Shown: positions 4,047 through 59,396 of the stretch, piece after piece | How the letters are laid out: the number at the start of each line of letters is the position of its first letter | Numbering within the stretch: position 1 is the first letter of the stretch | From: Octopus sinensis | Lineage: Eukaryota | Assembly (NCBI RefSeq): GCF_006345805.1 | Contig: NC_043012.1 | Span: 7,192,001-7,256,000 of the forward strand | DNA length: 64,000 nucleotides | Reading direction: 5' to 3' | The notes under the pieces: generated by a model | Database searches by the model: none | Told to the model about the DNA's origin: nothing | What the model saw: the letters and a program-made list of their open reading frames with translations, nothing else | Translations under genes and position numbers: made by a program

Positions 4047-4409
4047 GTTTACATCACTAGAACTGCTTTGAAATCGTAATTTGAATAATTCTATGTTATC
4101 GATAAAGTAGAAATGTTACATAAGTCTTGTCTTCCTACTCTCTGTATAATACCTCGTCGTTGTTTTTTAATGAGCCCACCCAAGAGTAAACTAACAAAAT
4201 AAAGTAACAGTCAATCACTAGCGTCGATGAATCAACTACTTCACCAACCGTACCTTGCCTAAAATTGCTGGCCTCGTGACAAATTTTGAAACAATTACCA
4301 TTGTTTTGTTTTATTTTTACTGTTTTACTTGTTTCATTCATAAGAATGCAGCCATGCTGGAGCACCACCTTGAGGAATTTTAGTCGAACTAATCGTCGAT
4401 CGGAATTTC

Positions 4410-5133
4410 GTCCGTCTTTTTGTTCTACGTTCAAATTCCGCCGATTTTGTCTTTCATCCTTTCGGGGTCGATGAAATAAATACCAGTCGGGGGTCGATAT
4501 AATTAGCCAGCCCCCCCCTCACCACAAAATTTCAGGCCCTGCGCCAATGGTAGAAAAGATTATTATTTATTCTGCCAATATTGATTTTGCCTTGCAATTC
4601 TTTCGGAGTCGATATACTAAGTACCAGTTGAGTTCTGGGGTCGATGTAATCTTCTAGCCGCCTCCCCACAAATATTTTAGGCCTTTGACGACGAGGAAAA
4701 ATTGTTACTATTGTTACAAATGCGGCGAACAAGCCTACCAGACAAAATGTTTAACGACATTTCATCCGTCTTTACGTTCTGAGTTCAATTTCTGTCGAGG
4801 TCTACTCTGCCTTCAATCTTTTCTGGGACGAAATAAATAGCAGTTAAGTACTGGGGGGTCGATGTATTCGTCTATCTCCCTCCCCTAAATTTCAGGCCTT
4901 GAACCTTAAAGTAACAAGGATTAGATGTAATCGTTAACGCGTCGAACAAAATGCTTAACGATATTTCTTCTGACGCTTTACGTTCTGAGTTCAAATTCCA
5001 CCGAGGTCAACTTTGCCTTTCGTCCTTTCGGGGGTCGAAAAATTAAGTACCAGTTGAGTATTGGGATCAATGTGATCGACTATCCCCCTCCCCACAAAAT
5101 CCAGACCGTGTGCCTATAGTGGAAAGGATTATT
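4410..5133 (+). mobile_element. head-to-tail array of four B1 SINEs
   Basis: core and CCCCTCCCCAAAATTTCAGGCCTTG..AAAGGATTATT tail repeated four times. Confidence 0.8.
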
Positions 5134-5335
5134 ACCTCCGCCTTAGCGAAGGCGGAGGTATTGTTTTCAGTCGCATCTGTTTGTTTGTTTGACCATGGAC
5201 ATGATATCTCAAGAACCGCTGGATGGATTCAGATGAAATTTTCAGAGATGTTCGGCCTTGTGACTGGCACGAAATGATTAGATTTTAGGATCGATCCAGT
5301 ACTGGACAAGGATTTGGGATTATTTTTCCTGTTTT
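5131..5335 (+). mobile_element. Helentron-associated non-autonomous (HINE/DINE-1-like) fragment
   Basis: terminal hairpin TACCTCCGCC-TTAGCGAA-GGCGGAGGTA, then (GTTT)n and GGATGGATT..ATGAAATTTTCAG, resembling HINE ends as I recall them. Confidence 0.6.
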
Positions 5336-5341
5336 ATTTTT

Positions 5342-5462
5342 ACTTTGCCTTTCATCCTTTCGGGGTCGATAAATTAAGTATCAGTTGCGTACTGGGGTCG
5401 ATATAATTGACTGGCACCCTCCACCAACATTTCAGGCCTTGTGCTTATAGTAAAAAGGATCA
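5342..5462 (+). mobile_element. B1 SINE, 3' half
   Basis: core plus tail, ending in (CAT)n. Confidence 0.8.
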
Positions 5463-5475
5463 TCATCATCATCAT

Positions 5476-10551: not shown

Positions 10552-10860
10552 AGTGGAGGCACATGACCTAGTGGTTAGAGCAGCGGACTCGTGGTCGAGG
10601 GATCGCGGGTTCGAATCTCAGACCGGGCGATGTGTGTGTTTATGAGCGAAACACCTAAGCTACATGCAGTTCCGGCAGAAGGTAATGGCGAACTTCTGCT
10701 GACTTTTTTGCCCCAACTTTCTCTCACTCCTTCCTCCCACATCTTGCAGCTCACCTGCGACGGACCCGCGTCCTGTCCAGGTGGGGAACCTATACGCCAA
10801 GGAAACCGAGAAACCGTCCCTTATGAGCCAGGCGTGACTCAAGAAGGAACAAACAAACAA
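10552..10860 (+). mobile_element. SINE family C, full length
   Basis: A/B-box head GGAGGCACATGACCTAGTGG..GGTTCGAATCTC, V-like CCTGCGACGGAC..GTCCAGGTGGGG, (ACAA)n tail. Confidence 0.92.
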
Positions 10861-10904: not shown

Positions 10905-11027
10905 GACTGCGTGGAGCCTAGGTGTTTCGCTCATAAACACACACACATCACCCGGTCTGAGATTCGAACCCGCGATCCCTCGACCACGAGTTCGCTGCTC
11001 TAACCACTAGGCCATGTGCCTCCACTA
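10905..11027 (-). mobile_element. SINE family C, 5' part, inverted relative to 10552-10860
   Basis: reverse complement of the head, ~95% identical. Confidence 0.9.
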
Positions 11028-11079
11028 ATGCAGTATAGTAGAATATAACGTATCGTTGCATGGTATTATTAATATAACA

Positions 11080-12055
11080 CAGAAGGTGGTGAGCAAGTGT
11101 TTAGCGGCATTTTTTCCGGCTTCACAATCTGACTACAAATCCCGCCTTTCATCCTTTCGGGGTCGATAAATTAAGGTACTAGTTGAGCATTGGGATCTAT
11201 GCAATCAGCTTAACCTATATAGCTTTATAGCTTTAGTGAAAAGAACTATTAATATAACATTAAGGGCGTTAAGGCGATTAGCTGGCAGAAGCGTTAAGCA
11301 CATTGAGCAAAATGCTTAGCGGTATTTCGTCTGCCGCTACGTTCTGAGTTCAAATTCTGCAGAGAACGACTTTACCTTTCATTCTTTCGGGGTCGATTAA
11401 ATCCACTTAACCCAGCCGCCGAAGGTTCAGGCCATGTCCCCTATAGTTGGAAGGAATATAACACTGAAGGCGGCGAACTAAAAGAAACGTTAGCGACTCG
11501 AATAAAATGCTTTGCAGCGTTTCGTCCTGTTTTTTCGCGTTCTGAGTTCAATTTCCTGCCGAGGAAGAATTTTCCTTTCATCCTTTCCAGGGTGATAAAC
11601 TACTTACCAGTTGAATCCCAGGGTCGAAATACTCGACTAACCCTGTCCCCTAAACTTGGGAACTTTGTGCCAAAATTAGAAACCATTCTTAATGTAACAT
11701 AGCAATGTGTATTATTAGCCGAGGAACAACGTTTAATTAATTAAAACTGCGCACATAGAGAAGTGGAGAGTCCTTAACTTCAATGAAATTTTTGTTTTCA
11801 TTAAAAACTCTGCATTACTTTTTACATTAAGAAGGCGGCGAGCTGGCAGGCTCCTTAGAACCCGCGGGATGAAATCCTTAGCAGTATTTCGTCCACTGCA
11901 ACTTTCTGGGTTCAAATTCCGCCGAGGTCGACTTTACTTTTCATCCTTTCGGGGTCGATAAATCAAGTACCTGTTGAGTACTGGGGTTGAGGTGATCGAC
12001 TGTTCCCTCTCCCCACAAAATCCAGGCTTTGTGCCTATAGTAGAAAGAATTATTA
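11080..12055 (+). mobile_element. cluster of four co-oriented B1 SINEs
   Basis: copies near 11080, 11270, 11465 and 11830. Confidence 0.8.
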
Positions 12056-24517: not shown

Positions 24518-24826
24518 GCTGTTTGTTTGTTCCTACTCGAGCCATACCTGGCCCATATAAGGGCCGGTTTCCCGGTTTCATTGGCGTATAGGTTCCCCAC
24601 CTGGACAGGACGCCGGTCCGTCGCAGGTGAACTGCTAGATGCGGGAGGAAAGAGTGAGAGAAAGTTGTGGTGGAAGAGTCAGAAGAAGTTCGCCATTACC
24701 TTCTGCCGGATCCACGTGGAGCTTACGCGTTTCGCTCAGAAACACACACACTGCCCAGTCTGAGATTCGAACCCGCGATCCCCCGACTGCGAGTCCGGTG
24801 CTCTAACCACTAGGCCATGTGCATCC
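24518..24826 (-). mobile_element. SINE family C, full length
   Basis: C consensus; ACAACTTT TSD at 24510-24517 and 24827-24834. Confidence 0.92.
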
Positions 24827-27367: not shown

Positions 27368-27674
27368 GAGGAAGCACATGGCCTAGTGGTTAGAGAAGCA
27401 GACTCACGGTCGAGGGATTCGCGGGTTCGAATCTCAAACCGGGCGATGTGTGTGTTTATGAGCGAAACACCTAAGCTCCACGTGGCTCCGGCAGAAGGTA
27501 ATGGCGAACTTCTGCTGATTCTTTCGCCACAACTTTCTCTCACTCTTTCCTCCTGCATCTTGCAGCTCCCCTGCGACGGACCGACGTCCCGTCCAGGTGG
27601 GGAACCTATACGCCAATGAAACCGGGAAACCAGCTCTAATGAGTCAGGGATGGCTCGAGAAGGAACAAACAACA
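27368..27674 (+). mobile_element. SINE family C, full length
   Basis: TSD ACT(T/C)CACTATAG at 27356-27367 and 27675-27686. Confidence 0.92.
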
Positions 27675-28391
27675 ACTCCACTATAGAAAAATAGAGCTAA
27701 TAATACAAGAAAATTCAAACAAGTACGATGGGATGGCCATTGCTGGAACACACTTGATCATAAGTCTGTTTGACCAGGAATAATGTGGAGCTAAACAAGC
27801 ACAAGAACAATAAATGTAAAGAAGAATGAAAATATGATGTTTGGAATTGAATAAAAGGAACAAGGATAATATCTAAGCATTGTGACGTCAGTGGATGGTA
27901 GCAGAGGATAAAAGTGTTAGCAGTATTTAGTGACGTCCCATCTATTTCTGAGTTCAAGTCAGGTTCATCTTTCATCAATCGTAGATCGACAAACTAAGTT
28001 CCAGTTAAATTTTGAGTCGATATAATCGAAATAATAAATTCCTACATTACAGACACGAAGAAATCGAGAATTTCAACCAAGATTAGAATACAGTATTTAA
28101 TACCTCGGTCACAGTGTTGGCAGAGCAGTGAAAAAATTGCCAAACGGTATTTATATGGTCCTTTACAACCGGAGTTCAAAATCTTACTGAGATCAATTTT
28201 CCATTGCAGCCTTTTGAGTTAGATATGATAAAGTACCAGTCACGTACTACTGGGAATTTCTTACCAATTTTCAGGTCCTTTTTCGCACCTGTCGTTTAGC
28301 ATATTATCGTTCACGTAACAAGAGTGTAAATATTCGTTGTGTAAATTATTTCTACGTTTGTTTACTCTGTGAAAAAGAGCTCACACAACAC

Positions 28392-28792
28392 AGTTCTTTT
28401 CTATTCTAGACATAAGGCGCGAAACTTTGGGGGAGGGGACCAGTCGCTTACATCGACCCAGTACGCAACTGGTATTTAATTTACCAACCCCGAAAGGATG
28501 AAAGGCAAAGTCGACCTCGGCGGGATTTGAACTCAGAACATAAAGATAGACGAAATACCTATTTCTTTACTACCCACAAGGGGCTAAACACAGAGGGGAC
28601 AAACAAGAACAGACAAACGGATTAAGTCAATTATCTCGACCCCCGTGCGTAACTGGTACTTATTTAATCGACCCCGAAAGGATGAAAGGCAAAGTCGACC
28701 TCGGCGGAATTTGAACTCAGAACGTAACGGCAGACGAAATACCGCTAGGCATTTCGCCCGGTGTGCTAACGTTTCTGCCAGCACGCTGCCTT
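28392..28792 (-). mobile_element. composite: B2-tailed SINE inserted into a B1 SINE
   Basis: AGACGAAATACC duplicated at 28548-28559 and 28732-28743; B2 tail at 28560, B1 tail at 28392. Confidence 0.85.
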
Positions 28793-29099
28793 TCACACAA
28801 CGTAGTTTCCTTTCCCAAGTAACGTCGTTTCAATTCGCACTCGTGAATAATGCGTGAAATGCATGAGTGCTAGATAATCGCATTGAATTGTTTTACCCCT
28901 GCACGTATGTATACACACGTATATATACACACGTATGTATACATTACTTCGGGATGAATGTGAAATAATTCTATTTTGGAACATTGAAGCTTGAAGCATA
29001 TATATATATATGTAAAGCCATAAATAAACTTCAAAAGTCATACTCAATCCTTCCCGACAAAATTTCTGACCTTGTGTCTAAATTATAATCAGTGAACCC

Positions 29100-30460: not shown

Positions 30461-31590
30461 GACGTTTGTAATTAGTATGTAATGTAGGTTTTTACTTGAG
30501 CTTCGTAGAACCCATCAAAGAAGAAGGATCGTTCATCCCGAATCAGCATCACTACCAGAACTATTATCACTACCACACTATTCAATCACGCAATAGACTT
30601 TAAAAAAATAATTAAATAATGATAATAAGCGTCTGGCATATGATAACATATGTAGCGGGCATGTACAGCAATCGTTTAATAAACAACAACCGTTTCCATA
30701 GAAGAATAAAATAAAGTAAAATGGAATGGAAAAAAAAAATTATTGGTTTGATCTTGTGCCAATGTAAGAAATCATTAAAACGAACTAAAGTTGACAATTC
30801 TGCTATTCAAGCGACCACCATTTTGAAAGGCAATATCGCAATGGTTTTATTTGTGTTGCAGTATTTATCCATCAATTAGTATTCAGCGCTGGTAATTGCT
30901 ACATATTGGAATTTCTTAATGCCGAATCACGATACTATCAGAGAGATTTTATGTCCAAGACAATCCAAACATTAAACTCTTATTCCGTTTTATTCTATTT
31001 TTGCAGCAGGGCGTGGCTTCTTGTTAATCTTTATATATTTTTATCGTTACTTTTCTCATTTTTCACGCTCGTTTTCCATATTTTTACATACTCATACACA
31101 CATATCTATAATGCTTGCATGTGTGTGTCTGTGTGCGTGTCTGTGTCTGTGTGCGTGCGCGCGTGTGTTGTGTTCAAACATACCATTTAGTAATTTGCCT
31201 TCATAAAATGTTCCCATCCATTGCCTTCGAGGCAAACAAAACATTACAACGCTTTGTGTAGGTGTGCGTGTGACTGTGTGAGCGTGTGTGTGTATTGTCA
31301 TGTGTATGTATGTGTGTGTGTGTTTTCTTATTTTTGTCACGTGTTTTGTATATTTGGCTTTTAAGTTGTCGATCGAACTAGTAATAAGCACTAAGATGTT
31401 TCCTCGGCGGACAGTTTTATCTGAATTTATCTCCGCCGGACCAAAAGAGGCACGCAAACTGACGAACACATCTAACAAAAACATACACACAAAAACACAT
31501 ATGCACGCGTACATTTATATTTACAAACGACGTGCATGCGTGTGTGTGTGTTCATGTATATACATATATATATATACAGACAGCCGACAA

Positions 31591-31685
31591 ACAGATAGAT
31601 AGATTGATAGATAGGTAGGTAGGTAGATAGATAGACAGATAAATAGATAGATAGACAGACAGACAGACAGATAGGTAGATAGATA

Positions 31686-31741
<56 letters not shown>

Positions 31742-31743
31742 AT

Positions 31744-31810
<67 letters not shown>

Positions 31811-31859
31811 AAGATAGATAGATAGATAGATAGACAGATAGATAGATAGATAGATAGAC

Positions 31860-31894
<35 letters not shown>

Positions 31895-31901
31895 TAGATA
31901 A

Positions 31902-31946
<45 letters not shown>

Positions 31947-31967
31947 CAGATAGATAGACAGACAGAC

Positions 31968-32018
<51 letters not shown>

Positions 32019-32037
32019 AAGATAGATAGATAGATAT
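31591..32037. repeat. (GATA/GACA)n microsatellite
   Basis: direct. Confidence 0.98.
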
Positions 32038-32970
32038 GTTTCTTTATTAGCCACACAGGGCTGCACACAGATAGAACAAATTACAAGGTAGTGTGCGTGC
32101 CTCTTTTGAAGGTAAAAAAATAATTTTAAAAAATAAATAAATAAATAAAATTTTAAAAAAAAGGGGGGGTCGATCAAAAGGGATCGTAAAAGGAGAGAAA
32201 GAGGACAAAAAAAGGGGGGGTTAAAAAAAAGGGGGAGAGGAAAAAAAATTGATCAATAGGGATCGTTATCACAGAAATGTCAATATGAAGTGTAAAGGGG
32301 AAGACAGGTGAGGTTTAGCCGTGGAAAGAAAAGCCTACGGAAAAGACCACGGTAACCTCGGTCAATGAAGTCACATGTTATATTTCTTTTTTTTTTTTTT
32401 GCAAATAAGCAACTCTCTGTATTAATTTTTACGGTTCATATAATCATAGTCAAGGTGGCTTCGTCATTCATACGTGCCATCCTTGCTACATTCACCCATC
32501 TTTTTTTAAAACATTCACTAGACAAAACTTGCCTCTCTACTCTCACTTTCCTCTTCAAGTGATACTTGAAGAAGTTGATGAGAGATTGACCAGAGAGGAA
32601 AGTGTTTGTCTCTAATCCTTTCAGGCGCGTCCACCAGATACATTCTTTCGCCATAGTCACAAGTATGATAAAAATAGCTCTTCCTTCCCCTTTGAAGGAA
32701 GGAGGCGTGACGATATTAACGATAGACTCGGCTGATAAACCGACACGTCCCACACGTGACAGCAGTCGTTCGACATAAGCCCACAGGTGGGAAATTGCTG
32801 GACACTGCACGATTGCGTGCAGAGCGGTTTCGTCGCTCTGCCCGCATCTCGGGCAGGTCGGCCCCGTGTTTCTCGAGCCATGCCTATAGAGCTTATCCCG
32901 AACGGGTAGCTTCTCGGTAGCACCGCCAGGCCAGGGATCTCTGGAAGTTGTCCATAGGTCCCGGGCCGAA
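32038..32970 (-). mobile_element. Tx1-type (L1-clade) LINE, 5'-truncated, inserted in (GATA)n
   Basis: DNFQRSLAWRCY..LPVRDKL..CPRCGQSDETALHAIVQC zf-RVT/CCHC end, homologous to 43070-43566; stop at 32436; tail GCAGCCCTGTGTGGCTAATAAAGAAAC. Confidence 0.9.
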
Positions 32971-33428
<458 letters not shown>

Positions 33429-33604
33429 TGTACACGTACACACAAGCATACATACACGTAAACACAAAATCACATGATGCTTGCATTCAGCAACACAATC
33501 ATACACCCGCACACATTTCACACGTTTTTACAAACATATCTACACACGAAGATGCACACATAAGTGCACCAAACACACATAAACACATCCACATCCACAA
33601 CCAC

Positions 33605-38277: not shown

Positions 38278-38400
38278 ATATAAAATGATAATAAAGAAAA
38301 GTCACCTCAATGCAACTACGTATCGCTTTGCAAGATGTTCACAAATACTTCAGGTATTAGGTTCCGGAGTATTAATTTATTGATTGGTATAATTAATTTG

Positions 38401-38460
38401 CGGTGAAGTGGCAGAATCGTTAGCACGCCGGGGGAATGCGTAGCCGTATTTCGTCTGCCG
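38401..38460 (+). mobile_element. 5' part of a B2 SINE (host of the Tx1); continues at 43815-43998
   Basis: SINE TSD GGTATAATTAATTTG at 38386-38400 and 43999-44013. Confidence 0.92.
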
Positions 38461-38624
38461 CGCATGTGTTCGTGAAGTAAGAATTGCTGTTTCGTGGTGT
38501 TAATATTGTTAACAACTGTTGTTTCTTGTTAAACTGTTGAATAACTTAACTGTTGGAGTTTTCAATTGAAAACACTTAGTGCTTGTGGTAGCACGCGTTG
38601 TTCATTCCCCCTTTGGGGGGAAGA

Positions 38625-40158
38625 ATGTCGTCTAGCATGGAGCCTACCGTTGGAGCAGAAATACTTGTTTCTCCTGTTGAGAGGAGGAAATACATGTCCG
38701 GCGAGGAGCCAACTACAGACAAGGAAATAGGGGTTTCCCCCGCTACAAGAAGGAATAGCAGAGAGGATAATATATTTGATATTTTTGGAGATGTGTCTGA
38801 GAGCTCGTCAGAACTTTCACCAGAAGAGTTTCCGACTTTGCCAGAGAACAAAGGCATTGTGTCGAAGAGAATAATTGATGTGCCTAGCATCCAGATAGAA
38901 CCAAAAAATGGAAAAAAAAGTTTTGCGTTGGTTGCTGGGGGTGGAACCCAGATACTGTCGACGAATAAAAGCGAAATTATGAAATACAGCAAAATGATGG
39001 AAATAAATGACAACAGTGTGAAAATTGAACCTCCGCAAAAGTTATTACAGGAAGAAAAGCAAAAAACAATAATTTTCAAAACATATTGTCTACAAAATAG
39101 AAAAATTGAAAGAATGTCAGAAGAGAAAATAGAAAAGTGCTTAAAGCCAATATTGGGCGACGTAGTATTTCTGAGAAGAGGGAAAAAATTCGGAACGGTG
39201 GAAGTAAGGTTCACCATAAAAAATAAATAGCACACAAGAACTCAGTGGAAACGTTGAAAACGAACGACGTGGAGTTAATACCCTATTATATGGGGATGAG
39301 GACGTCGCGAATAAAAATTACAAGGGTCCCGCCAGAGGTCGAACCTATGTGGTTGTTGGCGGCAGTCCTAATCAAAGAGGTAGAAAAAAATTACTCTCCT
39401 CCAGGCTACCGCTACGGAAAACCCACGCTGGGATGGTAAAACAATTAATCTTCTCATTCAAGCGGACCCTAAAATAATTCAAACAATTCCTGAGACAATT
39501 GAGGTAGGGGAGGAGAACCTCGTGGTGTTTGTTGAGGGCCGAAAACCTCGATGTTTTTTATGTGGTCAATTAGGCCACATTCGAAGGAACTGCAAGGAAA
39601 ATGAAGAAGAGGAGGAAGAGGAGAAAAAAGACAAAGAGGAAGAAGATAGAAGAAGAAACAGATGAGAAAAAAACAACAAACAAAAGAAAAATACAGCCAG
39701 CAACCCAGCCGAGAGCGGCGACTACTACAGAACAACGACCAAAAAAGACTGCCAGAAGAGAAAAAGAAGAAAAAGGCATAATAGCCGTATACACTAAAGA
39801 TACTGAGCTCATGAGAGACATTCAACTCATAAAGACTGTAAAAAAAATTGATAACCTTTCAGAGGAATTTATCAATTACGACATATATGAAGTCTCAAAT
39901 AAGACTTATAGAATTCTACAAAATAAGTACAGAAAGACTGTATCTTCATTGAGATTAGATTTTAACAAGTCGATATTTCATGGATTACCAGCTCCGATCC
40001 CGCGAGAAAAGGAAAAGGTGGAGATTCCCCCTCCACCTGATAATTCTGTGTCGGTGGTGAGACGGGATTTTGACAAATCTATTTCCCAAGACCGTCCACC
40101 TCCGACCCTGGATAAAAAAAAGGTGGAGGGTCCCCCTCCACCGGACAATCCTAATTAA
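38625..40158 (+). pseudogene. Tx1 ORF1 (gag-like), ~3 frameshifts
   Basis: CFLCGQLGHIRRNC zinc knuckle at 39552-39593 (manual frame), E/K-rich tract, two PPPPDN repeats. Confidence 0.85.
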
Positions 40159-40169
40159 ACAGGTAAGTG

Positions 40170-43100
40170 ATGGCTATTCACATTGGTTGTTTAAATGTTC
40201 ATGGCCTGTTGTCAAGCTGGAAGCAAGGACGCTTTCTGAATGACATCAGGTCGAGAAATTTGGATGTAATTGTTGCAACGGAAACCCGGGTGAAGGGGCC
40301 AAGAGATCTGCTCCCCCTCCTGAACGGCTACGAGAAATACGTTTCTCCGAGTCGGGCGGGGGGAGGTGGGGGTGGGGTTTGGTCCTACTAAAACGAAACC
40401 GGGTAGCCGAGAAAAAGTTGGTTTTTTGTGACCCAGAAGGCAGGCTGGTCGTTCTCGACTTGACATTCAGTTGTGGCAAGACAATCAGGCTGGTCGCTAT
40501 TTATGCACCAAACATTATTGGCCCGCAAACCGAATATTTTCGTGGCCTAGGAAAGTTCCTAGCCACGTCGCATTCACTAGTAGTGTTAGGAGACTCTAAT
40601 ACAATATGTGCAGCACACACAGATTGTGTTGGCTCAAACTCGAACATGAACAGAAAATGTAACACAGGCTTTCGGGATCTGCTAAGTCAATTTCAGCTAG
40701 CAGATCCATATAGGTTGGAGCACCCGAACACTCCACAGTGGACGTGGTCAAATAGTGACGGGTCTACCAGAACATATCTAGATAGGATTTTAATTAGAGA
40801 AAAAGATAAGTCCATAGTTGAGTGTCCACAGTTTTTTCTAGTCAGCTACAGTGACCACAAGATGGTTACCTGTAAACTGACGGTAGATAAGTTGCATAGA
40901 CAGGGATCTGGCTACTGGAAACTCAATACGTCCCTTTTGGCGATTGAGGAGTACAGAAAGCGGATCAAGATGTTAATACAGAGGGCATTAACAGGTACCA
41001 TCATTAATAACAAATGGTGGTACGCCCTAAAAAGAGCCATCAAATATGAGTCTATTAGGTTTAGCATAAGTTTAGCTAAGAAGGGACGTAAAATAGGAGA
41101 TGGTCTAGTTAAGGAACTAGAAGAAGCCTGGAGGACTGGTAATACAGACCAAGCGAGGGTGAAAAGACTGGAGTTAAACCAGCATCTTGAAGCCCACCAC
41201 ATGGGAAGTATTACCAGAGCTAAGTTACGTGCAATGGGAGTGAAGGAATCAAAGCCGCTGGATGGGCCCGAGTGGTGGAAGCTCGGCAAGGAAATAGTTC
41301 CTCTATTCGGTCTTTGACGAATCAAAATGGTGTCTTGATAAACGAACCCGAGAAAATGTGTGAGGTCTTTCGGGAGTACTTCGCCCAGCTGTTCGGGGGT
41401 GACGGCGGTCCTGGTGGTGGGAGAGCCCTCGAGGACTTTGTTACCGGGCTGCCGTGCCTCTCGGGGTCGGATGCGGAGTCTTGCGAAGGGCCAATCACAC
41501 TTGAGGAGGTGATGGAGGCTTTGGCCGATTGTAAAGCGGGTAAGTCACCGGGACTTGATGGTCTTCCGTACGAGCTGTATAAATGTATGCCAGACTTGTT
41601 CGGGCAACTACTGACTGACGTGTACGCGAACTGGAAACAGAATGGGTTATCCCCAGATCTGTGCGCCGGGGAGTAGTGACGTTAGTCAGAAAGGACCCGG
41701 ACAAGGGGGACGTTCTAGAGAATTTCAGGCCATCACTCTGTTAAACGCAGAAGTGAAGATTTTGGCCAAGGTTCTAGCAAAAAGGTTGGCGCGTGTCGCG
41801 AATGGTATAGTCGGGGAGGCACAGACATGTTCCATCCCAGGCAGAACCATTCAGGATACCCTCCATCTTATTCGCTATACCATAGAGAGGTTTGGTAATA
41901 AATCTGGCAAAGGTGGGGCATTGGTGCATTGGACCAGTCTAAAGCTTTTGATAGGGTTGACCATCGATACCTAGCGACTGTACTTGCGCGGTTTGGCCTG
42001 GGCCTTGGCTTCCTCGGGTGGTTTATCGCTTTGTACCACAACATTGACTCGATAGTTCGGGTGAACGGTTTCCTTTCGAAGCCGTTCTGCATCAGACGCT
42101 CGGTTCGTCAAGGATGTCCGCTTTCACCACTTTTGTATGTGATGGCTCTCGAGCCATTACTGCAAAGGTTGAGTGGCATCCCGAGAGAACCAGGACTAGA
42201 GGAGTTTGTTACGGCTTTCGCGGATGATATCACTATCAGTGTAACCACAGTGGTACGCCTACGTGAAGTAGGTAAGACTATTGAGGCTTACGAGGAGGTA
42301 GCAGGAGCAAAGATTAACCGGGAAAAGTCGGTCGGCTTGCAGCTCGGCACCTGGGTTGGCAAGTCGATGCCTTCAGACAGTGTTGTTAGGCGCTGGACGG
42401 AGGGACCGGTTAAGTTGCTGGGAGTCTGGTTTGGACCAGGCCTCCAGATAGAGAAGAACTGGACGGAGGTATTGAGCAGGGTGGCTGCAGTAGTCAAGAC
42501 TTGGTCTTGGCGGTGGCTATCCCTGAAAGGGAGGGCGGAAGTGGCCAATGTGTTTATCGCATCGGTCATTACCTACCGCCTGACTGTCGTGCCCTGTCCG
42601 GATTCGTGGTTGATCAGGTTGGAGAGACAGCTCTTTCGCTTTTTGTGGAAGGGCAGGTCGCCACTTGTGAAACGCTCTGTCTGCTGTCAAAAGCCTTTAA
42701 ATGGAGGTTTAGGGATGCCTTGGTTAATGATGCGCAGATATGCGTTGAGGTTGAGGCACCTCTGGATTCTCCTGGATAGTGAACGGGTGTGGTCTCCGCT
42801 GGCCAGACAAATGTTCCCTGAGTTCAAGAGTTTTTGCGAACAGGAAGCCTGGTGTTCTCGTAGACCGAGGTCGAGTGAGTGGCATAAAGAGTGCCGTAAG
42901 GCCCTCTTGCTGTTCCGGCGCTCGGGCAACGCCAGCGGTGGGGGTTCCACACGGATTTTATATAGTGGGTTGGTAGAGTCTGAATGCGACGATGGCCTGG
43001 GGTCGACTCTAGGTCTCGGATTTATTCAACTGGACAGCTTGTTTCATCGTACATTCGGGTTGAGAACGTTGGACAACTTCCAAAAGTCCTAACCTGGCAA

Positions 43101-43566
43101 TGCTACAGAGGTGCCTTGCCTGTTTGGGATAAGCTCGCAAGACATGGTAAACGTCAGTCGCCGACCTGTCCAAGATGCGGTGGGGACAGGGAAACCGTCC
43201 CTCACGCTATTGTTCAGTGTCCGGAGATAACTGAAATGTGGGCTTATGCTGAACATCTGTTGTCCGGCGAAGGAAGAGTACGGCTGTCGACTGAGTCAAT
43301 TATAAAAATTGACCCACCGGGAGTTCTAACGAACGAAGGTAAGAATTGTTTTCTCACGGTTGTAGCAATAGCAAAAGAGGCTGTATGGAATACTAGGATA
43401 AAAGGAATTAAGACAGGCAACTTTATCTCTGGTGACAATTTACGATCCTTTTTTTTTTCATTTGAAAAGGAAACTGTGGCTGGAGAAGAGGTGTCTGTCA
43501 GAGTGTACGTTCCAAAAGAGATGGAAGTATGTTACACGAGTGTTGTGCGTGCAAGGAACCGTGTGA
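40170..43566 (+). pseudogene. Tx1 ORF2: APE endonuclease, reverse transcriptase, zf-RVT; ~7 single-base frameshifts
   Basis: LNVHG, TET, VLGDSN, LDRIL, SDH (APE); KSPGLDGLP, DQSKAFDRVDH, QGCPLSPLLY, FADD (RT); CPRCGGDRETVPHAIVQC. Confidence 0.93.
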
Positions 43567-43814
43567 ATAGACGAGGAAAAAAAAAAAAAAGGAAAAATAA
43601 AAAGGTATCAGCGGTAGATCGGGGCTTGTGGGATCGGAGCGTAACTTGATCATCGCTTCATTTGTATTGTTTTTGTACTGTGTATTCCATTCGATTTTTA
43701 TGTATTGTATTTTATTTTTGATGTCACATTTATGTAAAATCATATCGATTCACTGATCCCATCAGTTGTACTGTCCATATCTATGTTTGGCCCCCGGTGG
43801 GCAATAAAGAAATT

Positions 43815-43998
43815 CGTATTTCGTCTGCAGTTACGTTCTGAGTTCAAATTCCGCCGAGGTCGACTTTACGTTTCATCCTTTCGGGGTCGATAAATTAAGT
43901 ACCAGTTACGCACTGGGGTCGATGTAATCGACTTAATCCGTTTGTCTGTCCTTGTTTGTCCCTTCTGTGTTTAGCCCCTTGTGGGTAGTAAAGAAATA
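43815..43998 (+). mobile_element. 3' part of the host B2 SINE
   Basis: resumes exactly at the duplicated target; tail TGTGTTTAGCCCCTTGTGGGTAGTAAAGAAAT. Confidence 0.92.
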
Positions 43999-44204
43999 GG
44001 TATAATTAATTTGTTGATTGCTATGATTGCTAAATGATGTTTTATCTTTTATCTTAATCTGTTTGGAATATCTAACTTTCTGTAAGGACTCGAGAAACTC
44101 CTCCAGTCGGTTCTTTGGAAAAGCTCAATAGACGCGCCATTTGTTGCATCTGCGGTATTTGCAAAGTACCAAGCATTCGTACATAAATAGACGCAGACAT
44201 GGCT

Positions 44205-50964: not shown

Positions 50965-52020
50965 TCCATTTTGACGTAGGCTGTTTTTTGTTGCCCAACA
51001 TATTTCTTTACTACCCACAAGGGGCTAAACATAGACGGGACAAACAAGGACAGACATATATATTAAGTCGATTATATCGACCCCAGTGCGTAACTGGTAC
51101 TTAATTTATTGACCCCGAAAGGATGAAAGGCAAAGTCGACCTCGGCGGAATTTGAACTCAGAACGTAACGGCAGACGAAATACAGCTACGCATTTCGCCC
51201 GGCGAGCTAACGATTCTGCCAGCGCGCCGCCTTTGTTGCCCAATATATTGCCGTTTACATCCCGAGCATGTAATTAAATCAAGTTCTCCGATGCGCATGT
51301 AAAATTAGTTTTTATGGTGAAATTATGTTCTTGTTCTAATCGCTGTCCTGATCCCTCTGTTATATTGATACAAATCCCACAGTTGGCTCTCCTACATTTT
51401 TTTACTGTCGGCTTAGCGGTTATTGTTGGGAGTAATTAGGCCTGGGTTAAAATCTTTTTCATTGATTTTGGTTGTCTCTTACTTTTGATGATTGGGTGTG
51501 TTTTGAGGATTTGATTCATCTTTGGGTCTCTCTTGGGTGGAGCTATGCTGTGGAGAATAGTGTCGAAGGCATCATTGTTATGTTGATTGTGTGTGGAAAT
51601 GTAAGGCAGGGTTTTCAATTTTTCTTCCTTCTTTGGTCTTGATTGCCTAACTTCTTGTGTATTTAATTTAAGTACTCGCTGGATCGTATTGTCGATTAAG
51701 AGCTGCGGGTAATTCCTATTGATGAGTGTGGTTTTCAATTCCTGGAGTCGTGTGTAACGGGTGTTTGCGTTTGATATTATTGTGCATATTCTTTTGGCTA
51801 AACAAAATGGGACATTCATTCTGGTGTGTCTCGGGTGGCAATAATCAAATGGCAAGTACTGCTTCGAGTCTGTGGGTTTGTAATAGATATCTGTCTCTAT
51901 TTGGTCTCCAACTTTCTTAATAAGGATATCTAAAAACGGTAGTTGTTCCTGACTGTACTCTATCGTAAATTGGAGGTTTTCATTTATTCCATTTAGAAGT
52001 GTTCGGAATTCGTTAAGTTT
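50965..52020 (-). mobile_element. Penelope-like element fragment (RT C-terminus, linker, start of GIY-YIG)
   Basis: LQFTIE..QLPFLDILI..TDIYYKPTDSKQYL..CHPRH..VPF.LAKRICTI; C..NCGIC..NFTCASENLI..CSGCKRQYIGQ. Confidence 0.9.
51002..51232 (-). mobile_element. B2 SINE inserted in the GIY-YIG YIGQ codons
   Basis: TSD TTGTTGCCCAA(C/T)AT at 50988-51001 and 51233-51246. Confidence 0.92.
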
Positions 52021-53607: not shown

Positions 53608-53839
53608 ATTTCTTTACTGCCCACAAGGGGCTAAACATAGAGGGGACAAACAAGGACATACAAAGGGATTAAGTCGATTAAATCGACCCCAGTGCGAAAC
53701 TGGTACTTTATTTATCGACCCCGAAAGGATGAAAGGCAAAGTCGACCTCAGCGGAATTTGAACTCAGAACGTAACGACAGACGAAATACTGCTAAGCATT
53801 TCACCCGGTGCGCTAACGTTTCTGCCAGCTCGCCGCCTT
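53608..53839 (-). mobile_element. B2 SINE in (TA)n
   Basis: full copy; TSD-like TTTATATATAT. Confidence 0.9.
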
Positions 53840-54299
53840 TATATATATTATAATTACTATTATTGCTGTTGTTGTTGTGGTTCAGAATATTAGACAGGCA
53901 GGCGGGCAGGCAAGCAGCCGACATCTTCATCCGTTTTGAAAATACACTGAAGATACACAAACTCTTTTTGACTGGTATCAGATATAATGTTAGCAATGAT
54001 TCACACATACAAGATATTTATCATTATTTGACCTTATTAAAAGACCTGCAGTCGAAACTGATATGTAGTCACGAACTAGCTCAGTGTATGTCTGTTCGTC
54101 GTATTTCCTTTCATTAACCTTTACTCATTAACCTTGATATATTTAGATTGAATATAAAATCAAGTCCACCTCAAATATTCTCAGGACTTAAAGCAACTGT
54201 TGTTTCGTCGTTATTTTCTTTCAATTCGATATCTCATTTCCATTTAACGATGTATTTCAATCCATATATAGAAAGAGAGAGAAAGAGAAAAGAAGAGTG

Positions 54300-58159: not shown

Positions 58160-58862
58160 AGAAAGAGATAAGGAGAGAGAAGTACAATACTAAATTTTTG
58201 AGAGGAGGAATTTATGTTATGTGCACTGTTTATATTGGTCGGACTGATGTCCTCATCTTAATTGCTAATATTCACTGCGTTTCGGCTGTTGTATTCTCCA
58301 TTCTTCTTCAGGTGTCTTGCGATTCATTTTCGTGCCTCTACTGTGGATTGAACTGAGAACCTCAAGGTGATTGCATTGCATTAACCAACGCCTTTATCCA
58401 CTACGCTTCGAAAGTAGACAGACTGACAGACAGATATAGACAAAGAGAAAGACAGAAGGGAGACAGGTTATAAGTGGATAAAGACTGACAGAGACGGAGA
58501 GGGGGAGAAGAACAAAGAAAGACTAATGACAGACAGACTGATATAGAAGTAAACTGGATTCAACAATGAGGAGATATAAAGAAAAACATACAAGTAAAAA
58601 TAAACGATTGTAAAGTGAGACGATAAAAGATTAGATGTATTGAGGTGGGGCAGAGGTAGTGGTTATATGAAGGAGAAAATGTGGGGAGGAAACGGAAATA
58701 TCTATAGACACACACTCTGTGTGTAGGGCGTATTCAAAGTTGAATTAGAGTGAGGCATTATTGAAGTGTCACATTTCCGCTTCGACGGGCGACTAGCAAT
58801 AAACTGTGTTCCGCATATAGTCTTTGCTAGGTTTCTTTACGAAAAACCTGGACAACCTACGT

Positions 58863-59234
58863 ATATCCTTTTGTACTCCAGGCACAAGGCCCGAAATTTT
58901 TGGGGAGGGACCCAGTCGAGTAGATCTACCCAGTACGCAACTGGTACTTAATTTAACGACCTCGAAAGGATGAATGGCGAAGTCGACCTCGGCGGAAAAC
59001 CTATTTCTTTACTACCCTCAAGGGGCTAAACACAGAGGGGACAAACAAGGACAGACAAACGGATTAAGTCGATTACATCGACTCCAGTGCATAACTAGTA
59101 CTTAATTTATCGACACCGAAAAGATGAAAGACAAAGTCGGTCTCGGCGGAATTTGAACTCAGAACGTAGCGGCAGACGAAGTACGGCTACGCATTCCGCC
59201 CGGCGTGCTAACGTTTCTGCCAGCTCGCCGCCTT
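58863..59234 (-). mobile_element. composite: B2 SINE followed by the 3' half of a B1 SINE
   Basis: B2 at 59002-59234, junction AAAGAAATA|GGT, then TTCCGCCGAGG and a B1 tail. Confidence 0.82.
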
Positions 59235-59396
59235 TCGAACATAACCAAAATAATTCACATATGAAGGAAATTTAAATACTATATATTATTTTAACTCCTA
59301 TATTATTTTAACACCTGGCAAAGTTAAAGATTATGAATAAAAAAATAATAATTTGGCAATTTATATGTTAACAGATTTCGAAGGAAAATTTATACT

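What the first reader, a model, noticed from the sequence alone, without database searches (positions are those of the whole stretch)
43772..43997. B2 SINE tail is homologous to the Tx1 3' end; B1 and B2 share head and core but differ in tail
Seen: LINE TGTCCATATCTATGTTTGGCCCCCGGTGGGCAATAAAGAAAT vs SINE TGTCCCTTCTGTGTTTAGCCCCTTGTGGGTAGTAAAGAAAT, about 34/42 matches. The second Tx1 family (32038) ends similarly. All three keep a GCCC..GGGY-type hairpin before (A/G)TAAAGAAA and have no poly(A). B1 copies instead end in CCTTGTGCC..AAAGGATTATT. Known: SINEs borrow partner-LINE tails, but L1-clade partners with stringent tails are uncommon. Inference: a tail swap recruited Tx1 machinery.
Basis: partly seen in the sequence, partly recalled or inferred. 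Interest (0 to 1): 0.8.

Follow-up and report, generated by a model that had tools for sequence, protein, structure and literature searches.

The report
Octopod SINE shares LINE 3' tail
A short octopod mobile element (SINE) ends with the same small hairpin-plus-AAAGAAAT tail as an L1-type LINE in the same window, a new example of the well-known SINE/LINE "shared tail" partnership; the older SINE family also seems to use this LINE group.

Summary
The LINE end (43772-43813) and the B2 SINE end (43957-43997) match at 34 of 42 aligned columns. No dinucleotide shuffle out of 2000 reached that score, and a second LINE fragment (tail 32039-32080, minus strand) ends the same way.

A covariance model of the tail finds only the five B2 ends and the two LINE ends in the 64 kb. 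Both LINEs belong to the L1 superfamily (AP endonuclease, RT, zf-RVT; best solved-structure match is human L1 ORF2p). Tx1-clade membership could not be tested here.

- **Nested insertion:** the LINE (38461-43815) sits inside a B2 copy, with its own 15-bp target-site duplication.
- **Age of the B2 design:** the same core-plus-tail design occurs in Argonauta hians, where the SINE tail matches the Argonauta LINE tail. It is therefore old, not a recent swap.
- **B1 tails:** these carry the same kind of hairpin (GGC-CTTGT-GCC). They match the 3' ends of related LINEs from other sources significantly, so B1 probably uses the same LINE group.

Verdict: a genuine stringent-type SINE/LINE pair and a new member of a known kind. 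The "tail swap recruited Tx1" reading is only partly supported.

The parts
38386..38400 (+). Left copy of the 15-bp target-site duplication (GGTATAATTAATTTG) of the host B2 SINE
   Evidence: Exact 15-mer repeated at 43999-44013; sequence read.
38401..38460 (+). 5' piece (tRNA-like head) of the B2 SINE that LINE1 split
   Evidence: Aligns to the head of the B2 consensus. The joined copy is 3.5% from consensus.
38446..38460 (+). Left copy of LINE1's own 15-bp target-site duplication (GTATTTCGTCTGCCG), made of B2 sequence
   Evidence: Repeated at 43816-43830 as GTATTTCGTCTGCAG.
38461..43815 (+). LINE1: about 5.35-kb L1-superfamily LINE. ORF1-like 38598-39230; ORF2 pieces 39601-40158, AP endonuclease 40379-41317, RT 41587-43092, zf-RVT 42984-43649. 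ORF2 is broken by at least three frameshifts, so this is a dead copy.
   Evidence: Pfam Exo_endo_phos, RVT_1 and zf-RVT. Best solved-structure hits are human L1 ORF2p for both EN and RT. Frame changes seen in tblastn.
43772..43813 (+). LINE1 3' tail, homologous to the B2 tail. Hairpin GCCC-CCGGT-GGGC at 43790-43802, then AATAAAGAAAT; no poly(A).
   Evidence: 47.4 bits with model R1.
43816..43998 (+). 3' piece of the split B2 SINE (rest of head, core, tail)
43957..43997 (+). B2 tail. Hairpin GCCC-CTTGT-GGGT at 43974-43986, then AGTAAAGAAAT.
   Evidence: 51.9 bits.
43999..44013 (+). Right copy of the host B2 target-site duplication
32039..33003 (-). LINE2: 5'-truncated fragment of a second L1-superfamily family (C-terminal zf-RVT region plus 3' UTR). 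Tail 32039-32080 with hairpin AGCC-CTGTGT-GGCT. (TATC)n microsatellite on both sides.
   Evidence: 68% aa identity to P0001; 39.3 bits.
28561..28793 (-). Full-length B2 copy, joined at its 3' end to a 5'-truncated B1a (28385-28558). One 9-bp duplication (GTTGTGTGA) flanks both.
51002..51234 (-). Full-length B2 copy with an 18-bp target-site duplication (AATAT[A/G]TTGGGCAACAAA)
53608..53840 (-). Full-length B2 copy with an 11-bp target-site duplication (ATATATATAAA)
59003..59235 (-). Full-length B2 copy followed directly by a 5'-truncated B1a (58850-58997)

Best explanation
The window is octopod (cephalopod) DNA. The interval holds two things: the 3' end of a dead, apparently full-length L1-superfamily LINE (probably Tx1 clade), and the 3' part of a roughly 230-bp SINE ('B2') into which that LINE inserted. 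The SINE has a tRNA-like head and a conserved core.

The last 42-64 nt of B2 are homologous to the end of the LINE 3' UTR. The shared module reads UCUNUGU.., then a 4-bp G+C stem capped by a 5-6 nt loop (CUUGU in the SINE), then A(A/G)UAAAGAAAU, and there is no poly(A).

The most likely mechanism is stringent-type trans-mobilisation. The Pol III-made SINE RNA presents the same 3' stem-loop that the LINE ORF2 protein recognises on its own RNA. Target-primed reverse transcription then starts just after ..AAAGAAAU and leaves 9-18 bp target-site duplications.

Shown here:
- the homology and its significance;
- that the motif is confined to SINE and LINE 3' ends;
- its conservation in LINE relatives;
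- matching stem variants in the SINE and LINE of each species;
- similar target-site duplications.

Inferred: protein recognition of the hairpin, internal initiation, and actual trans-mobilisation.

The older B1 subfamilies probably use sister lineages of the same LINE group. Tail differences among subfamilies would then reflect exchange or co-evolution within one LINE group.
For: - Tail similarity: 34 of 42 columns, score 42 vs 15.5 +/- 2.4, 0 of 2000 shuffles. LINE2 scores 40, 0 of 2000.
- blastn of the whole SINE against the window finds, outside SINE copies, only the two LINE 3' termini.
- Model R1 with filters off finds in the window only 5 B2 ends and 2 LINE ends (39-52 bits). The next best match is 15.6 bits.
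- The LINEs encode AP endonuclease, RT and zf-RVT. Their best solved relatives are human L1 ORF2p, with RT E = 2.6e-20 and EN E = 4e-10.
- Protein relatives from elsewhere end the same way: L002 (62% aa identity) and two Argonauta hians tails.
- Stem variants match within each species. The window has GCCC/GGGY in LINE1 and B2. Argonauta has GGCC/GGCU in its LINE and SINEs, and the Argonauta SINE vs LINE tail scores 51 vs 14.0 +/- 2.5, 0 of 1000.
- 90.7% of cells pair in the proposed structure, against 40-51% when partners are slid. One pair flips CG<->GC in 4 of 10 sequences. Every tail's minimum-energy fold contains the hairpin.
- Target-site duplications: LINE1 15 bp; B2 11, 15 and 18 bp; the B2::B1a chimera 9 bp.
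- B1a tail vs L002 LINE tail scores 34 vs 13.7 +/- 2.1, 0 of 1000. B1a and B1b vs the L004 LINE 3' UTR score 36 and 33, 0 of 1000.
- Published octopus annotations list L1-Tx1 as the L1-group LINE of coleoids, with 13 recently active families in O. vulgaris (PMC13282606, PMC8967140).
Against: - No LINE in hand has a tail closer than about 81% to B2, so the true master partner has not been seen.
- LINE1 is frameshifted and LINE2 is a fragment.
- The stem is only 4 bp. Single-sequence folding energies are no better than shuffles for the window's tails (z from -0.8 to +0.2).
- Covariation rests on 10 related sequences, and 10 of 500 shuffles reach the covariation score.
- B2 and B1a tails are not significantly similar pairwise: 17 vs 13.9 +/- 2.3, with 110 of 1000 shuffles reaching it. 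The link between them is transitive.
- L002, L004 and L005 come from unidentified organisms in metagenome assemblies.
- Tx1-clade placement was not tested.
- The direction of transfer (LINE to SINE) is inferred from the wider conservation in LINEs.
Confidence: 0.75

Rival explanations
1. One reading: B1 uses an unrelated, non-Tx1 partner, and B2 arose recently in this genome by swapping that tail for a Tx1 tail, so recruiting new machinery.
For: The B1 and B2 consensuses are nearly identical in head and core (7 mismatches in 134) but differ after ..ATCGACT. B2 copies are young (3.5-6%) and B1 copies old (17-19%). B2 and B1a tails are not significantly similar pairwise.
Against: - An Argonauta hians SINE aligns to B2 through the core and the whole tail: 90 vs 56 for B1a, with the tail at 51 vs 16.6 +/- 2.8, 0 of 1000. 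The design is therefore old.
- B1 tails carry the same hairpin and loop.
- B1 tails match the tails or 3' UTRs of LINEs of the same protein group.
Confidence: 0.15
2. B2 is really mobilised by another LINE clade that is abundant in octopus (RTE, CR1 or Dong-R4) and whose 3' end, absent from this window, matches B2 better. The match to the L1-type LINEs would then be secondary, for example because LINEs picked up a SINE-type tail.
For: The best LINE match is only about 81%. RTE, CR1 and Dong-R4 are the most active LINEs reported in O. vulgaris (PMC13282606). Only two LINEs with an RT are present in the window.
Against: The tail motif is conserved in every complete 3' end examined from the closer octopod-type relatives: the window's two LINEs, L002, and two Argonauta tails plus two further tail-only fragments. 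The stem variant tracks the SINE of the same species. No other sequence in the window resembles the tail.
Confidence: 0.08
3. The similarity is chance, or convergence on an A-rich polyadenylation-signal region.
For: The last 11 nt contain AATAAA or AGTAAA and are low in complexity. The stem is short.
Against: 0 of 2000 shuffles reach the score. The similarity covers the U-rich arm, the stem and the loop, not only the A-rich end. The motif is confined to 3' termini.
Confidence: 0.01

Closest known systems
Stringent-type SINE/LINE pairs, e.g. eel UnaSINE1/UnaL2 (Kajikawa & Okada 2002; cited in PMC4494074, PMC3472496)
   Same: The SINE 3' tail is copied from the LINE 3' end. A conserved terminal stem-loop is the presumed recognition signal, and there is no reliance on poly(A).
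   Different: The partner here is an L1-superfamily LINE, not L2, CR1 or RTE. The terminal motif is A(A/G)UAAAGAAAU, which contains a poly(A)-signal-like hexamer. Mobilisation has not been tested.
Stringent L1-clade pairs in plants and algae: maize LINE1-1_ZM and its SINE, Chlamydomonas L1-1_CR/SINEX-3_CR (Ohshima 2012, PMC3472496)
   Same: An L1-clade LINE shares a specific 3' end with a stem-loop with a SINE, which argues that stringent recognition exists within the L1 clade.
   Different: Those are in green plants and mostly still end in poly(A). This one is in an animal and has no poly(A).
SINEU / Tx1-Mar of crocodilians (Kojima 2015, PMC4494074)
   Same: SINEs assigned to Tx1-clade partners.
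   Different: SINEU has snRNA heads and poly(A) tails. It is linked to Tx1-Mar by shared target preference and shared 5' heads, not by a shared 3' tail.
CORE-SINE superfamily (MIR/Ther-1, octopus OR2; Gilbert & Labuda; Ohshima & Okada 1994; cited in PMC4758252)
   Same: tRNA-like head, conserved central core and exchangeable LINE-derived tail. Octopus SINEs are annotated mostly as tRNA-Core and tRNA-Deu (PMC8967140).
   Different: Core membership was not established here: alignment to a human MIR consensus recalled from memory gave p of about 0.07. Known CORE-SINE tails come from L2, CR1 or RTE-type LINEs.

Membership tests
SINE/LINE pair with shared 3' tail (stringent type) | The SINE 3' tail is significantly similar to the 3' terminus of a LINE in the same genome, up to the last base | tested here: met
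SINE/LINE pair with shared 3' tail (stringent type) | Conserved terminal secondary structure in both partners | tested here: met
   A 4-bp hairpin lies at the same place in all tails. 90.7% of cells pair, against 40-51% in slid controls, and there is one compensatory pair. Support is modest because the stem is short and the sequences are few.
SINE/LINE pair with shared 3' tail (stringent type) | Both partners integrated by target-primed reverse transcription with similar target-site duplications | tested here: met
   LINE1 15 bp; B2 11, 15 and 18 bp.
SINE/LINE pair with shared 3' tail (stringent type) | Overlapping periods of activity | tested here: inconclusive
   B2 copies are 3.5-6% from consensus. 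LINE1 inserted after its host B2 but is frameshifted. There are too few LINE copies to date.
SINE/LINE pair with shared 3' tail (stringent type) | Trans-mobilisation that depends on the tail | not testable with these tools
   Needs a retrotransposition assay.
L1 superfamily (L1 + Tx1) of non-LTR retrotransposons | N-terminal AP endonuclease, RT, and C-terminal CCHC zinc-binding domain in ORF2 | tested here: met
   Pfam Exo_endo_phos (below the curated cut-off, E = 4e-4), RVT_1, zf-RVT. CX2CX8HX4C read.
L1 superfamily (L1 + Tx1) of non-LTR retrotransposons | RT and EN closer to L1 than to other solved LINE proteins | tested here: met
   Human L1 ORF2p E = 2.6e-20 over 278 residues of the query (2-279), against R2 at E = 1e-11 over 136 residues. 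The EN matches only L1 EN, not other LINE endonucleases. Many clades have no solved structure, so this is a limited test.
Tx1 clade | RT-domain phylogeny places the element with Tx1 reference elements (RTclass1 / Repbase) | not testable with these tools
   No named Tx1 reference could be retrieved. Inferred only from the literature: L1-Tx1 is the L1-group LINE reported in coleoids and molluscs (PMC13282606, PMC8967140, PMC10294476).
Tx1 clade | Target-sequence preference (common in the clade, not universal) | tested here: inconclusive
   LINE2 lies in a (TATC)n microsatellite and L002 abuts (ATT)n. LINE1 lies in a SINE head. B2 target sites are heterogeneous and AT-rich, with (G)GTAT at three junctions.
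CORE-SINE superfamily | tRNA-derived head with Pol III A and B boxes | tested here: inconclusive
   A B-box-like GAGTTCAAATTCC is present, but ARAGORN and Rfam find no tRNA.
CORE-SINE superfamily | Conserved roughly 65-nt CORE domain | tested here: inconclusive
The core is conserved between the window and Argonauta.
CORE-SINE superfamily | Variable LINE-derived 3' region on a constant head and core | tested here: met
   B1a, B1b and B2 share head and core and differ in tail.

The most novel reading that the evidence does not exclude
One LINE group drives all the head/core SINE subfamilies seen here (B1a, B1b, B2), and so much of the octopus-specific SINE expansion. That group is made of L1/Tx1-type elements recognised through a small CUUGU-capped 3' hairpin rather than poly(A). 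Under this reading the stringent hairpin recognition is old: it predates the Octopus-Argonauta split and is also present in distant LINE relatives from other, unidentified organisms. That would support the idea that stringent recognition is ancestral in the L1 superfamily of animals as well as plants.
Probability: 0.35. Interest if true: 0.6.

Novelty: new member of a known kind. Interest (0 to 1): 0.4.

Why it matters
SINEs make up roughly a tenth of octopus genomes (11.6% in O. vulgaris, PMC13282606) and are a hallmark of octopus genome evolution. None of the open papers I could search names the LINE that moves them.

A shared, non-poly(A) tail with an L1-superfamily LINE gives a concrete and testable partner. 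It would also add an animal case to the few known stringent-type L1-clade pairs, which bears on whether poly(A)-based 'relaxed' recognition in mammalian L1 is derived.

The principle itself (SINEs borrow LINE tails; core-type SINEs exchange tails) is textbook, so the gain is incremental.

Tried and rejected
- **Public collections:** a scan of metagenome contigs with an alignment of the LINE C-terminus found no relative. A scan with the degenerate B2 tail pattern found nothing.
- **RNA tools:** Rfam at gathering threshold on the window, Rfam in E-value mode on one B2 copy, and ARAGORN all found nothing. The tRNA origin of the head is therefore unconfirmed.
- **Other ORFs:** Pfam on ten other long ORFs of the window found nothing. 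tblastn with LINE relatives found only LINE1 and LINE2.
- **Tx1 naming:** cluster look-ups returned no useful names. Look-up of P0008 failed.
- **L007:** its tail is degenerate and uninformative.
- **CORE test:** alignment of the core to a MIR consensus recalled from memory was not significant.
- **B1 and B2 tails as direct homologues:** rejected pairwise. Only a transitive link through Argonauta and L002 remains.
- **LINE1 carrying a native SINE head at its 5' end:** rejected in favour of nested insertion, because the 15-bp overlap is exactly a target-site duplication.

Full report
**What is at the coordinates.** The quoted strings are exact: the LINE tail lies at 43772-43813 and the SINE tail at 43957-43997. 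Upstream of 43813 are ORF fragments with AP-endonuclease, reverse-transcriptase and zf-RVT domains. Their best solved relatives are human L1 ORF2p, for both the RT (E = 2.6e-20 over 278 residues of the query) and the endonuclease (E = 4e-10). R2 proteins match only the RT fingers and palm.

The best named protein relative is from the octopod Argonauta hians. The window is therefore octopod DNA, and the element is an L1-superfamily LINE.

I could not place it in the Tx1 clade directly, because no named Tx1 reference was retrievable. The published literature lists L1-Tx1 as the L1-group LINE of coleoids and molluscs, with 13 recently active families in O. vulgaris (PMC13282606, PMC8967140, PMC10294476). 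'Tx1' is therefore likely but inferred.

**Is the similarity more than chance?**
- The two tails share 34 of 42 aligned columns. The local score is 42 against 15.5 +/- 2.4 in 2000 dinucleotide shuffles, and none reaches it.
- The second LINE fragment (32039-33003, minus strand; 68% aa identity to relative P0001) has a tail that aligns to B2 over 50 columns with 38 identities, also 0 of 2000.
- blastn of the SINE against the window finds, apart from SINE copies, only these two LINE termini.
- A covariance model of the tail, run with filters off, finds only the five B2 ends and two LINE ends in the window (39-52 bits). The next best hit scores 15.6 bits.

**Anatomy of the SINEs.** B2 is about 230 bp. 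It begins (AAA)GGCGGCGAGCTGGCAG.., has a B-box-like GAGTTCAAATTCC and a core ending ..GGGGTCGATGTAATCGACT, and finishes with a 64-nt tail. The five B2 copies are 3.5-6.0% from their consensus.

About twenty older copies ('B1') share head and core and then diverge. B1a is 16.7% and B1b 18.8% from rough consensuses. The B1a consensus differs from the B2 consensus at only 7 of 134 shared positions.

B1 tails are of two types:
- B1a: ..CCCCAAAATTTCRGGCCTTGTGCCTAKAGTAGAAARGATTATT
- B1b: ..GAAAATTGCTGGCCTTGTGYCAAAATTTGAAACC

The sequence after 43997 (GGTATAATTAATTTG, 43999-44013) is repeated at 38386-38400. Between that repeat and the LINE lies the missing B2 head (38401-38460). The 15 bases GTATTTCGTCTGC[C/A]G occur at both LINE junctions, 38446-38460 and 43816-43830.

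So a B2 inserted first, with a 15-bp duplication. LINE1 (38461-43815) then inserted into it with its own 15-bp duplication. The tail and the SINE lie side by side because of this nesting.

Other B2 copies have duplications of 18 and 11 bp. One B2 is fused to a 5'-truncated B1a, and a single 9-bp duplication flanks both. That points to one integration event, most simply a template switch from a B1a RNA to the 3' end of a B2 RNA.

**The tail in relatives.** LINE relatives fetched by protein identity end in the same module:
- L002 (62% aa identity): ..GGGCCCTTGTGGCCAATAAAAGAAATC(ATT)n
- Argonauta, tail 1: ..GTCAGCCAGGTGGCTAAGAAAGAAAT
- Argonauta, tail 2..GTCGGCCCTTGTGGCTAATAAAGAAAT

In the Argonauta locus the model also finds SINE copies with the same core whose tails nearly equal the Argonauta LINE tail: 51 vs 14.0 +/- 2.5, 0 of 1000.

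An Argonauta SINE aligns to B2 from the core through the whole tail. The score is 90 against 56 for B1a, and tail against tail is 51 vs 16.6 +/- 2.8. The B2 design therefore predates the split of the two lineages.

The stem variant tracks the species. It is GCCC/GGGY in the window's LINE1 and B2, and GGCC/GGCU in the Argonauta LINE and SINEs. This is what co-evolving partners would show.

**Structure.** Every tail's minimum-energy fold contains the 4-bp hairpin, usually extended by pairing of UCUNUGU with AAUAAAGA. Single-sequence energies are not better than shuffles.

On the 10-sequence alignment, 90.7% of cells pair, against 40-51% when partners are slid by 1-3 columns. One stem pair flips CG<->GC in four sequences and another shows GC/GU/AU. 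Four of 500 shuffles reach the paired fraction and 10 of 500 reach the covariation score. This is supportive but thin.

**B1 tails are not foreign.** B1 tails carry AGGC-CTTGT-GCCU, with the same loop and another base-pair flip. Pairwise, B2 and B1a tails are not significantly similar (17 vs 13.9 +/- 2.3). However:
- B1a matches the L002 LINE tail at 34 vs 13.7 +/- 2.1, 0 of 1000. Without the ATT repeat the score is 22 and 4 of 1000 shuffles reach it.
- B1a and B1b match the best-conserved block of the 3' UTRs of more distant LINE relatives. Against L004 (44% aa identity to LINE1) the scores are 36 and 33, 0 of 1000. Against L005 (42%) they are weaker: 23 and 24, with 14 and 3 of 1000 shuffles reaching them.

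B1 therefore probably depends on sister lineages of the same LINE group. The source organisms of L002, L004 and L005 are unknown.

**Mechanism.** The best reading is a stringent-type SINE/LINE partnership. The LINE ORF2 protein recognises the terminal stem-loop on its own RNA and on SINE RNA. Reverse transcription starts just after AAAGAAAU, which explains the precise ends without poly(A) in both Pol II and Pol III transcripts. The AAUAAA/AGUAAA hexamer within the tail may also serve as the LINE's polyadenylation signal. These steps are inferences; only the sequence relationships are shown.

**What is known.** Shared SINE/LINE tails and tail exchange on a constant head and core are classical. 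Stringent L1-clade pairs are known in maize and Chlamydomonas (PMC3472496). Tx1-mobilised SINEs (SINEU) are known, but they were identified through target preference and have poly(A) tails (PMC4494074).

I found no open paper that names a LINE partner for octopus SINEs. Repbase and Dfam could not be consulted. I therefore rate this as a new member of a known kind, of moderate interest.

Noticed in passing
window 38386-44013: LINE1 is nested inside a B2 SINE. The outer 15-bp duplication is GGTATAATTAATTTG and the inner 15-bp duplication is GTATTTCGTCTGC[C/A]G.
   Followed up: yes
window 28385-28793 (-) and 58850-59235 (-): Two B2 copies are joined at their 3' end, after 2-5 extra bases, to 5'-truncated B1a copies. 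The first pair is flanked by a single 9-bp duplication (GTTGTGTGA), suggesting template switching during one integration. Its junction is at the same SINE position (G|GTATTTCG) where LINE1 entered the other B2. It is unresolved whether this reflects an endonuclease preference for (G)GTAT or an RT stop point.
   Followed up: partly
window 11060-11710 (+); also 4400-5470 (+): Head-to-tail arrays of old SINE copies. In the first array, three copies with different tail types are separated by the same roughly 16-bp junction (TATTAATATAACAYWG). This looks like repeated insertion into one target site rather than simple tandem duplication.
   Followed up: partly
window 31500-32038 and 32950-33450: Long (TATC)n / (CTAT)n microsatellite on both sides of the LINE2 fragment. 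Argonauta tails end ..GAAATCTAT, so the repeat may be a preferred target or may have grown from the LINE's terminal CTAT.
   Followed up: no
window 10558-10568 (-), 11010-11020 (+), 24813-24823 (+), 27373-27383 (-): A different tRNA-like repeat family (..CGAACCCGCGATCCCTCGACCACGAGTCCGCTGCTCTAACCACTAGGCCATGTGCC..), seen four times. It is probably another SINE, read here in antisense.
   Followed up: no
L004 3860-3985 and 4290-4365: In an unidentified organism (ENA assembly), a distant relative of the LINE and a neighbouring non-coding element both end with GGCCTTGTGCCAAA ... AAATATYTACCCCTCAAAATC. The same LINE group may therefore have a tail-sharing partner there too.
   Followed up: partly
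protein P0008: A protein deposited as 'zinc-binding domain-containing protein [Herbaspirillum sp.]' from a MAG is 53% identical to this LINE's RT and C-terminal region. It is almost certainly eukaryotic LINE contamination in a bacterial bin.
   Followed up: no
L001 6390-6649: In Argonauta, a heavily 5'-truncated copy (3' UTR only) of a sister LINE subfamily lies about 100 bp downstream of the full LINE's tail, in the same orientation.
   Followed up: no
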